Shown one piece after another: positions 2,547 to 12,200 of a stretch of 64,000 bases of DNA (position 1 is its first letter; each line of letters begins with the position of its first letter). The translations under genes were made by a program, and so were the position numbers. Under the pieces are notes generated by a model, which saw only the letters and a program-made list of their open reading frames with translations, searched no databases and was not told the origin of the DNA. This stretch comes from Saccostrea echinata (Eukaryota): the NCBI RefSeq assembly GCF_033153115.1, contig NW_026889750.1, forward strand, positions 34,782,001 through 34,846,000. The letters are read 5' to 3'.

Positions 2547-4685
2547 CTGTCAGCAAACAAATTTATTATACTTTTTAGGTTCTCCAATTCAGCAGATGGG
2601 CAGTATACGATAGAAAATTATTGAATTATGGTATTCTTAAGTCACATTAAACATTACATAAAATAATTTAAAGTAAAATTAACCTGATTCCTGCCATGTT
2701 ATCAGTTGTTGGAGTCCATTTAGCAATTCCAGTTTTATTATCGAAGAAAAAATTCCTAGGTTGATGCAGAATTTTGTACACTGGTCTTTGATTTCCATCA
2801 TCAGAGACGTTGAACATCAAATCCACCTCCTTGTTAATTTCAACATTTATTGTGGTATTACCAGATATTTGCGGCGTTTCATTTTCTGAAAAAAGAGAAT
2901 TTAAAACTATAAAACAGAGCCTAAAAGCTAACCAAAAGTAATATACAGTCGAGATCGAGGTCAACCAGATTTTCGTGGGTAAAATAAGCCGACCTATGAC
3001 AGCGATATCTGCTTTCGAGCTTTTCTCTTTCTTTCCAGATGACAATGCAAGATTCAGGTCCCCCGTTGCAAGATAGTCAGAAATACAGGCTGACGAAGGA
3101 CGTGGACCACATTTTGTCTTTGCATCATCTAGCCGATCTGCATCCATTTCGTCGGTAAATATTGGCACAAAATCGGGATGTGAAAAATTTCTGTAGGTCA
3201 TGCTTTCATCATATTGAAAAAGCGAACTTTCATTTACCAACCCTTTAACAAAATAAGGAAAAACTGGTTAGAACACAAGGTTGTTCTTGACATAAGAAAA
3301 TATATGCTTTGGTAATNNNNNNNNNNNNNNNNNNNNNNNNNNNNNNNNNNNNNNNNNNNNNNNNNNNNNNNNNNNNNNNNNNNNNNNNNNNNNNNNNNNN
3401 NNNNNNNNNNNNNNNNNNNNNNNNNNNNNNNNNNNNNNNNNNNNNNAAAAGAATTATTAGACAATAAACAGAAATCATTGATTATCTAATCATATATAAT
3501 TATGTATCTTTTCTAGGCATTATAAAGACCAAAGAGGCATCATTTGAACCCGTGCTTCCTAACTTTGCACAATTAACAACTTATCTTGCAAAAGCAATGC
3601 AAGTTGACTTCAAGTACTATAATTATTGATATAGAAGAACATAAAAGCACTAATGTTTTGTTATAAGCACAATGATTTATCACTAATNNNNNNNNNNNNN
3701 NNNNNNNNNNNNNNNNNNNNNNNNNNNNNNNNNNNNNNNNNNNNNNNNNNNNNNNNNNNNNNNNNNNNNNNNNNNNNNNNNNNNNNNNNNNNNNNNNNNN
3801 NNNNNNNNNNNNNNNNNNNCAATTTTTGATAATCGGTTACTCGGACGTTTTTCCGATCGAGTACCCGAGTACTCGGTAAAAATGAAAAAACAAGTGTGTT
3901 AATTTTCTTGAGCCTGGTTAAGCTCTGTTAAATCCGAAAGCTGTTTTTATCACGTTTAATAAATGTATGTAAACAACTGAGTCAAAGGGAAATGAATTTT
4001 TGGTACCAAATTTATTTATCAAATAAACACAAAAGACACAATTCATACATCAAAAATTACAAATGGTTTACAGTTCTTGTTTATAGGACCTATTTCATCA
4101 ACGCAAAAAAAGAGAAGACAATCTGTTACGCAGGTTTTGATGTTAGACTAGCGAAAGAGAAGGAAAGGACGTTGTTGGGATCGCTAGTCTAATATTATTT
4201 TATATATTGATTGTTTCCCACTAAACTTACTATGCAAACTGACTTTCAACATTTTTTAAAATCTTTAATTATTTCTAAACATTTCTTCGGTAGCGGCATT
4301 TCTATGCATGTCTGACTTCGCCGCCGTACATGTGTATATTAAATAATTTAAGAAGATAATAGACCATGCTTAAACGATGTTTACTGAAAACAATCATTGA
4401 AGCCATCCAAAAATTAAGTACTTCAATAGGTGAGAACTGCTGTGTACCACATGATTGGTCATTAATTACCGTATATATACAGCCACAGGCGATAACAGGT
4501 GTTTTACAGGTGTAGATGACGACACGCTAGTTTCCGTATGAACATTTAAGTAATTTTTTTGATAAGTTTTTGATAAAAATATGTACTTTGAAATAAGAAC
4601 AAATACACTTCCGAGTACCATTTTTAGTATTCGATACTCGGACGTTCGATCGAGTACCCGGTTAACCGGGTACTCGTTGACATCC

Positions 4686-6282: not shown

Positions 6283-9200
6283 AAGAAATTGATAATAAAA
6301 GATGCTTCTGATATACCAGTTTGAAAAGGAGACCTCCTATAACAACTTGGAATATGACGAAGTTTGTAGTACAAGTCACATTGTCCTGTACTACAGCACT
6401 GATGTTTTGGTGTCCGATCATTCTTGGTGTAGTTGGGGCGTTGAAAGAACGGATTATACTTTAAAATGGTTCCTGCTTTTGGCTTTGATCGTTGTAATGG
6501 CCCTAAATTATTTGTGTCGGCGTACATATCATAGCAACATTCCTGAGATTAAGAACGAGATTTTGATAAAGTTACCGAGGTTCAGTTTTCTTTATTGAAC
6601 AGTTTGTAATTATTTGAAATAAATCAGATGTTTGTTAATTAGGATTTTTAATCTTTGTATACTTACAATGTTGGAGTCTACTATCACGGAAGCATAGCAC
6701 AGTAACCTGTTTTCTTTGTCAAATCTGTTTATGGTGAATCGCGGGTCAAACTTGAGAAGCCTGTTATGACAAGGACATTGAATGTGTGGCCTGCTGTTAC
6801 CAAAATTATTATTATTTTCCAAATGCCACTTTGTGCACGCTGCTTTATCTTTTAATTCCCGTACCCCTTCCGTCATTTTGTAGATCCAGACACCAGGTTC
6901 ACCTGTTAGAAAATTCAATAAAGAGTATAAATATTCTAAGTACAGTGAATGTCAAAAAGATTAAACTTCTCATATGATCTATAATAGTGTTCAGTTTGCT
7001 ACATTCACTCACGTTATCGTGGTGGAAAAATAACATTTTTTAAAAATAAATCATAATGAAACAATTATAGGACATACATTGAATTGTGCATCTACAAAGT
7101 TTTAAATTTAAAAGTACACATATAATAACCTCGATTTCCAGGGTTTTTGCTCATCGTAAAAGCTCCCTCTTGAAGGGAAAAGGGATTTGTTTTCGAAATG
7201 CTACGGTATCGGTATCCTATAACAATTTTCCGCTCTTTAATAGACTGCAAATTCACATCCAAATAATTCATTACTGTAAATGTGTTGTCGCCATCTGATA
7301 TCAGGAGACACTGGAAAGTTACTTTCTAAAATTAAAAAAAAACTATTGTAGTATCTGCGTAAATTCTTTTATTCTAATCTTTCAACTTAAATTACTCCTT
7401 AAAAATAGATCAACCAAACGCTTAAGAATATTTTATTACATGTTTTATAATCTTAAGAGTAAATATAACGCAGAATATTTTTAAAGTTTATCGTGCTTTA
7501 TGAGACTTGAAAAATGAAAGTCTCTTATACTGCATGATCAGCGTGTGTCACTCTTAAAAACAGCTTATTAAGAAATAATTATTGAATCAGCTGTTATTGG
7601 CCAGAGTTTACTTACATTCCTATAAATAATGCCAAACTGCTTGCATCTATTCAACCTCACCATTCAGAGTATTTGATATACATTGAATCTCTGGATATGT
7701 TTCTATTCATCAATACTTAATGAATAATTAAACAATTGAAATCAACTGTTGGTTTTCTCAGTTTTACCCAAATTTCAAGTTTTCCATAGGAATACCTTGC
7801 TGGATGGATTAAAATACTTTCTCAGACAAGTGAGTCGATATTCTTACAGGAATATGAAGTTTGATTTTTAAGTTTTACCAAGCTATGTAAAAAAAATAAG
7901 ATAAGGGTGTAGTTCTGAGTATATAAGTGTTCATCGACACTTTACACATAAGAGTATGAAGGCAGATTAAATATTATATGTGTCATGAAATTATACATTC
8001 AGTGTCATGTACATCGTATCAAAATCAATACCTGTGATTTATGATCAAAAAGTGTCATATTTTCCCACGTCACTTTCACGAGCCAGGTAGCTTCAAAATC
8101 TTTAAAATCCTTGAAGTATTTCTTTACAATTTTATCTGCTTTTTCTATTAACGCAATGTCTTTTGCATTCTCTTTTCTACAATATATGTAAGCTGTAGAT
8201 TACGGGAAGATTGATTTATCCATTTTTCTTACAATCAGAAATGTAAAGGAAAGTGAATGTCTTCTAGAAATTTTTTATCATGTAAAAAAGTTTCTTGAAA
8301 AGTATAGGAAATATAAATACCTCTCATAAGATTGGAAATATACTTTTCCTGAAGCGTCTGATGATAAATCCGTACAAAAGGGACAAATAATTTGTTTGTC
8401 TTTCTTTTTTAGCGAGTGTTTATCAGGATTGTCAGCCCTATTAAAGTTATCGCTCCTCGGATTCAGTCCAATTATACCATTTGTTCCAATCTAAAATTTA
8501 ACATATCTTACTATAAAACACTGCTATATCATCATAGACGCAAAGGGCAAAGTTTTCAGATTAACATTGATACTTCCTAATCGGTTTGGACTATGAAGTA
8601 TATTTGTTTGTATATTCAATGCTTAAATTTCTTTCTACTATATTTTTTTTTTTAAAAATGAGAATGCTCTTGGGAGCTTGTTAAATGCTGATCTAAATAA
8701 AGTACTACAAGAATTGAAAAATCTAAGCATTTGAGAAATGGAAAAGCGTATGTAAAGATTTTCGTAAACTCAAACATTTTATATGAAATAGATACTTTAT
8801 AGTTTGTAATATAATATGAAAAGCAACTTCTACAAAGGAAATATATACAAAAAAGGATTGCAATACATGTTTACTTAATTGTGTTACATTTCACACATAT
8901 TTTTTTTACTAATAAATTGTTCCGAAAAGCATAGATCCAACTCCAGACTTCTTTGTACTCGCTCGATTATTTATTATTTAAGAGAAACATCAATAAAAAT
9001 CATATACGGTACCAATTTTGATGCACCAGATGCACATTTCGACAAATGATGTTCAAGTTCCCATGCCGAAACGATGGAAATCCAAAATATTCATATAATT
9101 AGAAAAAAAAACTTTGAAGAGCAGAAAAAGAGCGTATCAAAGACTGGAGCCAAATACGTCGAAGGATCAGAGCTATGCATGAGGGAAATAATCCTTAATT

Positions 9201-12200
9201 TTGAAATAAATTTCTTAATTTTACCACAACAATTAAATATATATTCGTATTTTCAAGCTAGAACTGAAGTACTTAGCTACTGGACTGTAGTCCCTCGGGC
9301 ACTAACAGTCCACCTGTTGAGGCCTTGACCCAGGGGTCATAATGTAAATCATATATGGTACCAATTTTGATGCACCAGATGCGCATTTCGATAAATTATC
9401 TCTTCAGTGATGCTCATGCCGAAACGTTGGAAATCCAAAATATTTAAATAAGAAAAAATTTTGAAGAGCTGAAAAAAACAACCTAATTAAAGCTTACTAT
9501 GACATTGTTGAACCCTTCCATCGACCCGTTACCAATATAAGCTGTAGTTATGGCTTTTAATCTTTGACTCGTATTATCATTTCCAGTGAGAACGAAGTCG
9601 CCGTCTCCATATGGCATGGATACATTTACATCATACTGGCCTGAGAAAGATCACATAATATTATTTATATTTCTTTATTTAGATCAATTCATGTATATTG
9701 TATAGCATATTTGATATGATTAATTCTGGATATGAATATTTGTAATGGTATTAAAAATCAAGAAAACGTTTCGGGAAATAGAAATTCAGAAGATTGAAAA
9801 CCTTTTTTGCTTTAAGGTACGTTTTTGACAAAAAAAAAAAACCCAAGTAAAATTTGAATCTGAAAGATGGAACTTCACAAATAATATGATAAAAGATTTT
9901 GAATGGAAATTTTTCGTCAAATGATGAATGCATGCATATTAATTCTTGCATTGGTATTTACAATTAATATTTTACAAATATAAAGGTATACAGTAACTAC
10001 ACAGGCACTTGTTTCGGTAATGAATTGTTTAATCCATAGCATATTAATGTACCATTTCATAGTGTGATTCGACTTTTCCACTCTGCGAGAAGAGTTTTGA
10101 CGCTGTTTACGGAGACAAAGGAAATTAAAGATGAACATGCCTTAAATGGTTGTGTAGAAAAATTTACGTAGAAGACAATGATAATAAACAGTTTGTCAGT
10201 GCATTTCCTCTGAAAGTGTAAATGAGTGCGATTCTAAGGAGGGGGTACACATGAACTCCACGTAATTCGGAGCTGGATACCTTGTGTTATTATTAAACTA
10301 TATGGGTTAAAACATTTATTACAGAAACAAGTGCCTGTGAGTAACTAGGAATATGCAACTTAAGTAACATCTACATGATAAATAACCTTAGAATGCTTCA
10401 ATAGATAGTTTATGATTTAAGAACAAATTCTTACTTTCTAATGTTTTTATGGTATAAACAGATGGTTTACTTTCACGTTCCCCATATGAAGGATAATTAG
10501 TTGTATATCCATAACTTAATGCTGTAATAGTAACGTTATAATAGTTGTGTGACATCAGAAGTTTCTCCCAAAATATCTCCGGCACGTCCCCCTCTGTCAT
10601 TTGTTCATAGCCATCGATGTTCACTTTATAACGGTTAACAAAGCTATTGTTCTCTGAATCAGTCCACCTCAAAAATAAATTGTCCGCGGAGAAATTGCAG
10701 GAAGTTGATAATGGTCCAGGTGACAGTGGCTCTATTACAGAAAAAAATATAATTTATATTGAACACAAAACAAAGAGAACTTAGCTAAATGAATTATAAC
10801 CATTTTTTTTAAATTTGCGATCTTCGTTATATATATTGATTTTTGAATGATATAAAGATGAAATAGTTTCCAGTATGTCACATGTTTACAATTGTTACAT
10901 TTTATACTCATTGTTATATACATGTATATGTAATTTGGCCTTGAAAAGAGAGCTTATACATGGTAATCGAGTAAAAAATTAAAAACTTTCTGTTGTTATT
11001 ATGAATACATTACTAAAGAATCTTAATTGCCTACCAGATAGATATGGAATTGTTTCATTGGACATTGATATGAAGTAAACAGTTAACTCTTCACAAAATA
11101 CCTAAAATCACTTCAGTCCTCGGGTTATCTATGTAAATGGTCTGATCAGGGTTGCTCAATTGAACTTCGGTCCTGATATGGATTTCATAAAGGCGGCCTG
11201 GTCTAAGGTTACATAGAGATGTATACGCTGTTTGATTTCCAACTGGAAAGTTTTCTTTTGACCTCCAGTTTTCTTCAAGGATTATCTCATACCCTGATAT
11301 CAGCTCCTCATCCTGAGAGGGCGGGTTCCATTCAATCGAAAAACTACATGTTGTACTTTTTATTTGAATTGATCCAGCCAACAAACGGTTTCCTTTTGTT
11401 TGAAACAAACATACAGTATAAGTTGTAATATATGTTGCAAGAATCGGTTACCGCTATTTTATATGTGCATGAACGTTACCTTGAATGAGAAAAACTGCAT
11501 TATACTTTTAATGAATGAGCAATATCTTGTAAGTAACAAATTTATCACATTTATTTCAGATAAATAGACACTTACTATTATAACAAGTCGAATTTTTGTG
11601 ATAAAAAGAAGAATTACAGAGACATTGCTCAGTGCGACACTCTAAAGCAATATTTGGTAAGCATTCCCTAGATTTGTTGCATGGCTCAGAAAAGTGCAAG
11701 CCTGAAAAATAGTGATTCATACATGAATTCAGATTAAAAAGTATTGATTATTAACAATTGTAAATACAGTTTAAAATTCCAAAAATACATACAGGTCTTT
11801 ATCAGTACAGAAGTTTGACATGACTTACGGGTCAATGAAGAATTGCAATTATTTAGATACTCGAAAATATAAAACATTAGCTACAAAAGCTTACATTTGA
11901 GAACACATACTTCCTGAAACCCTTACGTTGACGGAATTCAAACTTGACCCCCATCCGTCTGAGTTCAGTGCAAGACATTGGTAGAAAAAACCACCATCAA
12001 GATCGAAGTCCACTCTGTTGATGACCAGAAGAGGATCTTCGAGGTCCAGCAAACTTCCTCTATATCTTTCTTCTGTCGTGTCTAAATCGGTCATCATCCC
12101 ATTTTTGATCTTTCGCCATTTGGTTTCGGTGACAGGTGGGAAGTCAGGATTATTTAGAACAGAAGCATTTATCCTCAATGTAGAACGATATGGTACTATC

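What the first reader, a model, noticed from the sequence alone, without database searches (positions are those of the whole stretch)
9372..9413. Intact hammerhead ribozyme in the sense strand of a host intron, 85 nt after a splice donor
Seen: all type I hammerhead core elements (CUGAAGA, GAAA, AUC site, 6-bp stem I, 4-bp stem II, palindromic GCGC loop on a minimal stem III) on the same strand as the mucin-like pre-mRNA, just after the donor at 9497. Known: metazoan non-LTR retrozymes are short tandem repeats with minimal, often dimeric type I hammerheads that yield circular RNAs. Inference: host transcription produces a self-cleaving intron, which could affect splicing or expression or feed retrozyme RNA production.
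Basis: partly seen in the sequence, partly recalled or inferred. Interest (0 to 1): 0.8.

Follow-up and report, generated by a model that had tools for sequence, protein, structure and literature searches.

The report
Retrozyme hammerhead copy in host intron
The hammerhead ribozyme motif is real, but it belongs to one ageing copy of a small jumping element (a retrozyme) with about two thousand sister copies in this animal genome. It landed in an intron of a cell-surface protein gene, and nothing shows it does anything for that gene.

Summary
Window 9413..9372 (- strand) holds a complete type I hammerhead: 6-bp stem I, CUGAAGA, 4-bp stem II, GAAA, 2-bp stem III with a GCGC loop, and a cut after C9378. 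Rfam Hammerhead_1 aligns over its full length at 28.2 bits, below the gathering score of 34. A descriptor finds it once in the window and never in 100 random windows.

It is not a host invention. It lies in a 1.4-unit, roughly 486-nt copy (8992-9477) of a ~345-nt repeat with about 2000 candidate places in this 923-Mb genome. Copies share a fixed 3' end and have variable 5' ends. The unit is collinear with the published, self-cleaving Mytilus galloprovincialis retrozyme Mg353. Against Mg353, four of the 12 helix pairs changed on both sides and none is broken.

The host context also holds. The exon 9640..9498 has a donor GT at 9497 that four paralogs conserve. The intron is 1007 nt, against about 110 nt in the two paralogs where the next exon was found; none of the four paralog loci holds the element.

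This copy is fairly old. Its stem II is weakened and its downstream hammerhead is dead, so it cannot excise a circle alone. An effect on the host is untested and looks unlikely.

The scan has already found this family several times on other DNA of this genome. It is an ordinary passenger insertion.

The parts
9372..9413 (-). Type I hammerhead ribozyme motif, with complete core and three helices. Stem II is 2 nt shorter than the family's usual type.
   Evidence: Sequence read; descriptor hit; Rfam RF00163 at 28.2 bits over model 1-45.
9377..9378 (-). Predicted self-cleavage site, after C17 = 9378 and before U9377.
   Evidence: Position in the hammerhead alignment. Cleavage was not measured.
8992..9477 (-). 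Retrozyme insertion of about 1.4 units, 34.8% G+C: full unit about 9477..9130 plus partial unit 9129..8992.
   Evidence: Direct repeats with spacing 347-353; matches to about 2000 candidate places in the genome; boundaries; G+C.
9023..9064 (-). Decayed second hammerhead. The CUGAAGA core and stem II are destroyed. The GAAAUGUGCAUC|UGGUGC half, with a would-be cut site at 9029/9028, is retained.
   Evidence: fails the descriptor.
9498..9640 (-). Host coding exon of 143 nt, encoding the pre-NIDO 'PYGDGD...GFNNVI' segment. Acceptor AG lies before 9640 and donor GT at 9497-9496.
   Evidence: Open frame with compatible phases. Four paralogous exons end at the same residue followed by GTAAG or GTAGG.
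8491..9497 (-). Host intron of 1007 nt, phase 0, GT..AG. Nearly half of it is the retrozyme copy.
   Evidence: The introns measured at the same position in two paralogs are about 110 nt, and none of the four paralog loci holds the element.
8321..8490 (-). Next host exon, the start of the NIDO domain.
   Evidence: Pfam NIDO profile positions 6-51, E 0.012. A contig of run X1 covers 8321-8422 and is spliced to 8176..8032 with GT..AG ends on the - strand.

Best explanation
This is one fairly old copy of a bivalve non-LTR retrozyme, a non-coding, non-autonomous retroelement of ~345-nt units that each carry a type I hammerhead. It inserted about 15-20 nt downstream of the 5' splice site of a phase-0 intron in a NIDO-VWD-EGF extracellular protein gene, in the same orientation as the gene.

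At the family level the mechanism is the published retrozyme cycle. This is inferred from the literature and from the anatomy seen here. Multimeric transcripts are cut by the hammerheads, the ~345-nt monomers are circularised by a host RNA ligase, and they are copied back into DNA by a retroelement reverse transcriptase acting in trans. That process leaves copies with a fixed 3' end and variable 5' ends.

At this locus only the upstream hammerhead still has an intact core and pairing. I expect it to cut the intron RNA slowly at 9378/9377 in vitro (about 55% likely). Because it has a weak stem II and lies only 887 nt from the acceptor, I expect it to lose the race with splicing in vivo. That would make it a passenger with no appreciable effect on the host gene, and it cannot release a circular monomer on its own.
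For: Family membership and dispersal:
- There are 2042 first-look candidates and 103 scored matches at 78-100% identity, in arrays of 1.2 to 3.7 units.
- About 24 of 29 sampled loci end at the same 3' point, 37 nt after the cut site, while their 5' ends vary.
- 40 of 64 hammerhead occurrences in the sampled loci pass the descriptor.

Homology to a validated retrozyme:
- Nine words from the published M. galloprovincialis construct Mg353 (PMC7229834 supplement) occur in the same order in the window unit. Four of them are 9-12-mers that occur only once or twice in 64 kb.
- Between Mg353 and this family, 4 of 12 helix pairs differ on both sides, 1 on one side, and none is broken. The 8-nt helix III palindrome is kept.
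- Mg353 self-cleaves at about 0.1 per min, and mussel tissues hold abundant circular RNAs of this element.

Expression and age:
- Contigs of the family occur in run X1, which also holds GT-AG spliced contigs of the host gene.
- The window copy differs from the family majority at 6.8% of sites (sampled range 1.6-8.5%). Its two repeated parts are only 82% alike.

Host exon and intron.

Kinetic argument: slow ribozymes in introns do not affect splicing, whereas fast ones do (Fong et al. 2009, as summarised in PMC10919898).
Against: - No cleavage assay and no RNA ends are available for this locus.
- The Rfam score is below the gathering threshold, both here (28.2 bits) and in the usual family type (32.1 bits).
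- The hammerhead fold is not the predicted minimum-energy fold of the motif or of the 513-nt transcript. The same is true of the proven-active Mg353 motif.
- Target-site duplications are not evident for the window copy.
- Circularity of the family's RNA in this species is not shown, because contigs cannot tell circles from multimers.
- The reverse transcriptase partner was not identified here.
Confidence: 0.85

Rival explanations
1. Domesticated or regulatory intronic ribozyme. The sense-strand hammerhead cuts the nascent intron soon after the donor and so tunes splicing or output of the NIDO-VWD-EGF gene, as proposed for the amniote RECK/CTCL hammerheads and shown for the Cpeb3 HDV-like ribozyme.
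For: - Sense orientation, 84 nt after the donor, with an intact catalytic core.
- There is precedent for intronic ribozymes affecting the host mRNA.
- The copy has been tolerated for a long time.
Against: - It is one of about 2000 family copies, and other sense- and antisense-intronic copies were noted in this genome.
- The hammerhead shows no excess conservation at this locus. It has 1 substitution and a 2-nt deletion in 44 nt, against 6.8% overall, which is within expectation.
- None of the four paralog loci holds the element.
- Stem II is weakened.
- The related mussel ribozyme is slow, about 0.1 per min, and the acceptor lies only 887 nt downstream.
Confidence: 0.05
2. Source locus. Host transcription through the intron feeds retrozyme RNA production. 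The intact core cuts its own site and, through a hybrid helix III with the decayed downstream copy, also cuts 9029/9028. That would release a 349-nt monomer which could be circularised.
For: - AUGCGCAU (unit 1) and AUGUGCAU (unit 2) can pair over 8 bp with one G-U pair, and the downstream stem I 3' strand and C17 are intact.
- For two intact copies, the predicted minimum-energy homodimer is exactly the double hammerhead.
Against: - The predicted minimum-energy structure of the intact and decayed pair is not the double hammerhead.
- In the 513-nt transcript neither hammerhead fold nor the hybrid helix III is predicted.
- The retrozyme contigs in run X1 differ from this locus by 5-11 letters per 100 and carry the family's usual stem II.
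- The copy is old and diverged.
Confidence: 0.04
3. Catalytically dead relic. The core letters survive by chance, but the shortened, A-U-rich stem II with a 3-nt loop and the loss of loop 2 contacts abolish useful cleavage under cellular Mg2+.
For: - The hammerhead fold is predicted at -0.4 kcal/mol, against -3.7 (family) and -5.7 (Mg353).
- The 2-nt deletion looks like a recurrent post-insertion lesion. The ten copies that carry it are no closer to the window copy elsewhere, and in L044 the neighbouring unit has the normal stem II.
- At about 7% divergence some copies keep a core by chance; 40 of 64 sampled still pass.
Against: - All invariant core positions, the G10.1-C11.1 pair and four stem II pairs are present. 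The G>A change at 9392 turns a U-G pair into U-A.
- Minimal hammerheads with short stem II are active in vitro (established knowledge).
- Rfam aligns the full model.
Confidence: 0.35
4. Chance resemblance to a hammerhead in A+T-rich intron sequence.
For: - The Rfam score is below the gathering threshold.
- There was no hit when the whole window was scanned.
Against: - No hit in 100 random windows.
- The motif is the conserved module of a repeat family with about 2000 copies.
- The helices covary with a published, active homologue.
Confidence: 0.01

Closest known systems
Mytilus galloprovincialis non-LTR retrozyme (construct Mg353; Cervera and de la Pena 2020, PMC7229834)
   Same: - The unit is about 350 nt, low in G+C and non-coding, forms short tandem arrays and is present in thousands of copies.
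- The type I hammerhead has a 6-bp stem I, a 4-bp stem II with a 5-nt loop, and a 2-bp stem III capped by GCGC inside an 8-nt palindrome.
- Sequence words are collinear around the whole unit.
- The helices are kept through compensatory changes.
   Different: - The sequences are clearly diverged: 10 of 44 hammerhead positions differ, and N7 is A rather than U.
- This genome is 923 Mb, so the species is probably another bivalve.
- The window copy also has a 2-nt shorter stem II and a dead partner hammerhead.
Rfam RF00163 Hammerhead_1 (type I hammerheads of newt satellite 2, Schistosoma Sm-alpha and similar)
   Same: The full 45-position model aligns. The core, CGAAA-NGCGCN-UC and the open stem I all match.
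   Different: Scores are 28.2 bits (window) and 32.1 bits (usual family type), under the 34-bit gathering score.
Conserved intronic hammerheads of amniotes (RECK, CTCL, DTNB; de la Pena and Garcia-Robles 2010, cited in PMC6155905)
   Same: A type I hammerhead on the sense strand of an intron, with retroelement-like ancestry.
   Different: The amniote motifs are single-copy and conserved at orthologous positions across classes. This one is a recent-to-middle-aged copy of a repeat with about 2000 copies, it is absent from the four paralog loci, and no orthologue data exist.
Penelope-like elements with hammerheads in their pseudo-LTRs (proposed autonomous partners; bioRxiv 10.64898/2026.07.22.740005)
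   Same: A hammerhead lies close to a fixed 3' terminus, copies form partial tandems, and 5' ends are variable.
   Different: The element has no reverse transcriptase or other ORF. No similarity to the Penelope-like copies of this window was found. The partner was not identified.

Membership tests
Hammerhead ribozyme, type I | Catalytic core CUGANGA ... GAAA ... with A15.1-U16.1, a non-G residue at the cut site and a G10.1-C11.1 pair | tested here: met
Hammerhead ribozyme, type I | Three helices around the core, with helix I open (5' and 3' ends in stem I) | tested here: met
   6, 4 and 2 bp. Pairs are kept through compensatory changes against Mg353.
Hammerhead ribozyme, type I | Score at or above the Rfam RF00163 gathering threshold (34 bits) | tested here: not met
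   28.2 bits for the window copy and 32.1 bits for the usual family type. Alignment is full-length in both.
Hammerhead ribozyme, type I | Mg2+-dependent self-cleavage giving 5'-OH and 2',3'-cyclic phosphate ends | not testable with these tools
   Only contigs of one small run were available.
Metazoan non-LTR retrozyme | Short tandem units of 150-450 bp, each with a type I hammerhead, in many dispersed copies | tested here: met
   Unit of about 345 nt in arrays of 1.2-3.7 units, with 2042 candidate places.
Metazoan non-LTR retrozyme | Low G+C (<45-50%), no LTR/PBS/PPT and no coding capacity | tested here: met
   34.8-36.4% G+C. Only spurious ORFs of 56 and 84 aa on the + strand. PBS and PPT were not searched for specifically.
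Metazoan non-LTR retrozyme | Expressed as linear and circular RNA of unit length | tested here: inconclusive
   Family contigs with head-to-tail joints occur in a run that also holds spliced host contigs. Contigs cannot show circles, strand or ends.
Metazoan non-LTR retrozyme | Target-site duplications flanking the array | tested here: inconclusive
   Short flanking repeats occur in some sister copies (L013, L007, L024), but none is clear at the window copy.
Metazoan non-LTR retrozyme | Homology to a published, experimentally validated retrozyme | tested here: met
   Collinear shared words and a matching hammerhead architecture with Mg353. No full alignment was made.
Domesticated intronic ribozyme | Conserved presence at the same intron position in orthologues or paralogues | tested here: not met
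   None of the four paralog loci holds the element, and the introns measured in two of them are about 110 nt. Orthologues are not available.

The most novel reading that the evidence does not exclude
The sense-strand hammerhead, only 84 nt from the donor, does cut the nascent intron. It could do so alone, or after pairing through its 8-nt palindromic helix III and stem I with abundant retrozyme RNAs made from other loci. In that case the level of retrozyme RNA in a tissue would set how much of this NIDO-VWD-EGF pre-mRNA is spliced. That would be a trans-acting link between a selfish circular RNA and host gene output.
Probability: 0.04. Interest if true: 0.6.

Novelty: new member of a known kind. 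Interest (0 to 1): 0.15.

Why it matters
For this locus, very little. It shows that the scan's hammerhead calls in this genome are copies of one retrozyme family, related to the mussel element that is already characterised.

Collectively, the roughly 2000 copies could be used to ask whether selection removes active ribozymes from pre-mRNAs. Many copies lie in introns in both orientations, with intact or decayed hammerheads. Comparing those classes would be an inexpensive genome-wide test of the cost of intron self-cleavage in an invertebrate.

Tried and rejected
- **Rfam scans.** At gathering thresholds over the whole window, and at E<=10 over 701 nt, Rfam found no hammerhead. This was a filter effect: a 62-nt query recovered it. 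RF00163 over the whole genome gave nothing at E<=0.001, and the control genomes did not ring either, so that result is uninformative.\n- **Minimum-energy folding.** Neither the motif, the 141-nt context, the 349-nt monomer nor the 513-nt transcript shows the hammerhead fold. I dropped this as a criterion because the proven-active Mg353 motif behaves the same way.\n- **Heterodimer of the intact and decayed copies.** The predicted minimum-energy structure is not a double hammerhead.\n- **Target-site duplications.** No clear one flanks the window copy.\n- **Subfamily test for the short stem II.** Ten copies share it, but they are no closer to the window copy elsewhere, and one array mixes both forms. 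It gives no evidence of a propagating lineage.\n- **Excess conservation of the hammerhead.** Within the family it is slight and is shared with the next ~70 nt, so there is no locus-specific signal.\n- **RNA evidence.** Only one small run of contigs was on offer. It shows no contig from this intron or from exon 9498-9640.\n- **Link to Penelope-like copies in the window.** No similarity was found, and no other hammerhead. The full Mg353 sequence has no reference id, so the full alignment was left out. Only short words and its 44-nt hammerhead, read, were used.\n- **Masked stretches and refusals.** Stretches of N in the window were left as they are.
Full report
**1. The observation**

Read on the - strand, window 9413..9372 is GCAUCA-CUGAAGA-GAUA-AUU-UAUC-GAA-A-U-GCGC-A-U-C-UGGUGC. 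This gives:
- a 6-bp open stem I (9413-9408 with 9377-9372);
- the invariant core CUGA-N-GA;
- a 4-bp stem II closed by G10.1-C11.1;
- GAA;
- a 2-bp stem III (A9386-U9379, U9385-A9380) capped by GCGC;
- C17 at 9378.

A descriptor I wrote requires the core plus at least 5, 3 and 2 bp in stems I, II and III. It finds exactly this site in the 64-kb window and none in 100 Markov-1 random windows. A relaxed version adds no further site.

Rfam found nothing at gathering thresholds over the whole window, nor at E<=10 over 701 nt. Given only 62 nt, so that the filters are lax, RF00163 Hammerhead_1 aligns to 9372-9413(-) over all 45 model positions at 28.2 bits (E 8.9e-6 for that small search). This is under the curated 34 bits. 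A sister copy of the family's usual type scores 32.1 bits.

**2. What the motif belongs to**

The motif sits in a direct repeat with spacing 347-353 nt. The unit 9480..9130(-) has 2042 first-look candidates in the window's own 923-Mb genome. The 40 candidates scored gave 103 matches at 78-100% identity, on many contigs.

In 29 non-redundant sampled loci the copies form arrays of 1.2 to 3.7 units. About 24 of them end at the same point...TATGATTTACAT(T), 37 nt after the hammerhead cut site. Their 5' ends fall at many positions of the unit. A fixed 3' end with ragged 5' ends is what target-primed reverse transcription of a multimeric or circular template would leave. That is an inference.

The element is A+T-rich (34.8-36.4% G+C). 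It has only spurious ORFs of 56 and 84 aa, on the + strand. Of 64 hammerhead occurrences in these loci, 40 pass the descriptor. The usual form is GCAUCA CUGAAGA GACA-UAAUU-UGUC GAA AUGCGCAU C UGGUGC.

**3. Relation to a published element**

The supplement of Cervera and de la Pena 2020 (PMC7229834) prints the Mytilus galloprovincialis genomic retrozyme construct Mg353.

Nine short words read from it occur in the same order in the window's 349-nt monomer, at positions 25, 45, 64, 80, 95, 194, 221, 255 and 291 after the cut site. The four longest are 9-12-mers that occur only once or twice in the whole window.

The two hammerheads have the same architecture. Of the 12 helix pairs:
- 4 differ on both sides and still pair: one in stem I (A-U against G-C), two in stem II (A-U against U-A), one in stem III (U-A against C-G);
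- 1 differs on one side;
- none is broken.

Helix III plus its loop remains an 8-nt palindrome in both. This covariation is the strongest evidence that the motif is a working ribozyme at the level of the family.

According to that paper, the mussel repeat self-cleaves co-transcriptionally at about 0.1 per min. Mussel tissues hold abundant circular RNAs of it. RNA ligases rather than the ribozyme probably close the circles.

**4. The host gene**

The - strand carries exons with FN3-like, NIDO (E 2.7e-7 and 0.012), VWD (E 2.3e-7) and EGF-like content.

Exon 9640..9498 is open in one frame. It starts after an AG and ends ...GFNNVI|GTAAGC. Its phases fit the exon upstream, which ends at 10435 in phase 1, and the NIDO exon downstream, 8490..8321, which begins IGTNGIIGL.

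Four paralogous exons on the same contig are 43-54% identical. All four end at the same residue, followed by GTAAG or GTAGG. In the two paralogs where the next exon was found, the intron is about 110 nt, and none of the four paralog loci holds retrozyme sequence. In the window the intron is 1007 nt (9497..8491). The retrozyme copy (8992-9477) starts about 15-20 nt after the donor and makes up nearly half of the intron.

The only sequencing run on offer, X1, is held as contigs. It shows GT..AG joints on the - strand for neighbouring introns (8177-8320, 7326-8031, 6901-7127 and 11392-11574), so the gene is transcribed from the - strand. It has no contig over exon 9498-9640 or over this intron.

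The exons were searched one by one by reference. The joined protein was not built.

**5. State of this copy**

The full unit differs from the family majority at 6.8% of sites; the sampled range is 1.6-8.5%. Its two repeated parts are only 82% alike. The insertion is therefore not young.

Within the hammerhead it has a 2-nt deletion (at 9400/9399) and a G>A change at 9392. Together these turn GACA-UAAUU-UGUC into GAUA-AUU-UAUC. Pairing is kept, but stem II loses its second G-C pair and loop 2 shrinks. One substitution in 44 nt is not significantly fewer than the roughly three expected, so nothing indicates selection at this locus.

Ten copies in the genome share the short stem II. They are no closer to the window copy elsewhere (82-93%), and in L044 the neighbouring unit has the normal form. 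I therefore read the deletion as a recurrent lesion, not as a propagating variant.

Predicted energy of the hammerhead fold:

| Copy | Energy (kcal/mol) |
|---|---|
| Window copy | -0.4 |
| Usual family type | -3.7 |
| Mg353 | -5.7 |

In none of the three is this fold the minimum-energy fold, so the energies rank the copies but do not decide activity.

For two intact copies, the predicted minimum-energy homodimer is exactly the double hammerhead with an 8-bp helix III. This fits the dimeric mode known for hammerheads with a minimal helix III.

The downstream partial unit has lost CUGAAGA and stem II (GGGAACUUGAACAUCAUUUGUC). It keeps GAAAUGUGCAUC|UGGUGC, with the would-be cut at 9029/9028. The predicted pairing of the intact with the decayed copy is not a double hammerhead.

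**6. Most likely mechanism and effect**

*Shown:* a core-intact hammerhead of a retrozyme family, on the sense strand of a real intron.

*Inferred:*
- When the host gene is transcribed, the motif can fold and cut the intron at 9378/9377. I put in vitro competence at about 55%.
- The related mussel ribozyme has a half-time of several minutes, and here stem II is weaker.
- The acceptor lies only 887 nt downstream.
- Work summarised in PMC10919898 found that fast ribozymes in introns reduce spliced mRNA, while slow ones have no effect.
- I therefore expect no appreciable effect on the host.

With one dead hammerhead, the locus cannot release a unit-length RNA by two cis cuts. The retrozyme contigs in X1 differ from this locus by 5-11 letters per 100 and carry the usual stem II. 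The RNA pool therefore comes from other copies.

**7. Comparison with what is known, and novelty**

This is the known kind 'metazoan non-LTR retrozyme' (PMC7229834). The family is homologous to the mussel element.

Intronic copies are common for such elements. About 42-44% of Xenopus retrozyme copies overlap introns, with modest depletion relative to intergenic DNA (bioRxiv 10.64898/2026.07.22.740005). Conserved intronic hammerheads are known in amniotes (PMC6155905), but their defining feature, conservation at a fixed genic position, is not met here.

Earlier notes of this scan already describe the same family on other DNA of this genome. They include sense- and antisense-intronic copies, and two follow-ups called them ordinary decayed copies. 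I reached the same reading independently from the data above.

**8. Verdict**

The motif is real and correctly placed. The retrozyme reading is right and the functional inference is unsupported. This is an ordinary passenger copy of a known kind of element, of low interest by itself.

What remains worth doing is a genome-wide test of orientation against hammerhead intactness in introns, and a simple cleavage assay.

Noticed in passing
window 60762-62017 (compare window 9323-9342): A tandem repeat of period 168/344 with 7.3 copies. It shares an 18-20-nt word (ATGrCCCCTGGGTCArGG) with the retrozyme unit. In the unit, that word lies just 3' of the point where retrozyme copies end. The best match is 61984-62003 at 95%, E 0.005. 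This could be a shared module or chance.
   Followed up: no
window 10000-10339: A MITE-like pair of inverted repeats (10000-10038 and 10301-10339, 87% complementary) lies in the host intron upstream. Contigs of run X1 cover it.
   Followed up: no
loci L002-L030 (sister copies): Retrozyme copies end at a fixed 3' point...TATGATTTACAT(T), 37 nt after the cut site in about 24 of 29 loci, while 5' ends vary. Some copies have short flanking repeats (L013 CAATA, L007 ACATA, L024 about 9 nt). This fits target-primed reverse transcription from a defined 3' signal.
   Followed up: partly
G000 contig C1 at about 34.75, 34.95, 35.33 and 38.23 Mb (L032-L035): Four paralogs of the pre-NIDO exon lie on the same contig, with the same donor position. 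The introns measured in two of them (L033, L035) are about 110 nt. This looks like a local family of NIDO-domain genes.
   Followed up: partly
L007 (C62:1298711-1302051) and L008 (C24:2787378-2790718): Two retrozyme loci on different contigs have identical flanks and identical elements. They are either a duplicated segment or an uncollapsed haplotig.
   Followed up: no
window 8997-9478 (other first-stage note s1-803517): The idea that the intact core cuts the decayed downstream copy. Helix III can pair over 8 bp with one G-U pair, but the predicted minimum-energy heterodimer is a different duplex, GCAUCUGGUGC with itself.
   Followed up: partly
window 3309-3464, 3661-3822, 15105-15270: Stretches of N (masked or gaps) lie inside the host gene region.
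   Followed up: no
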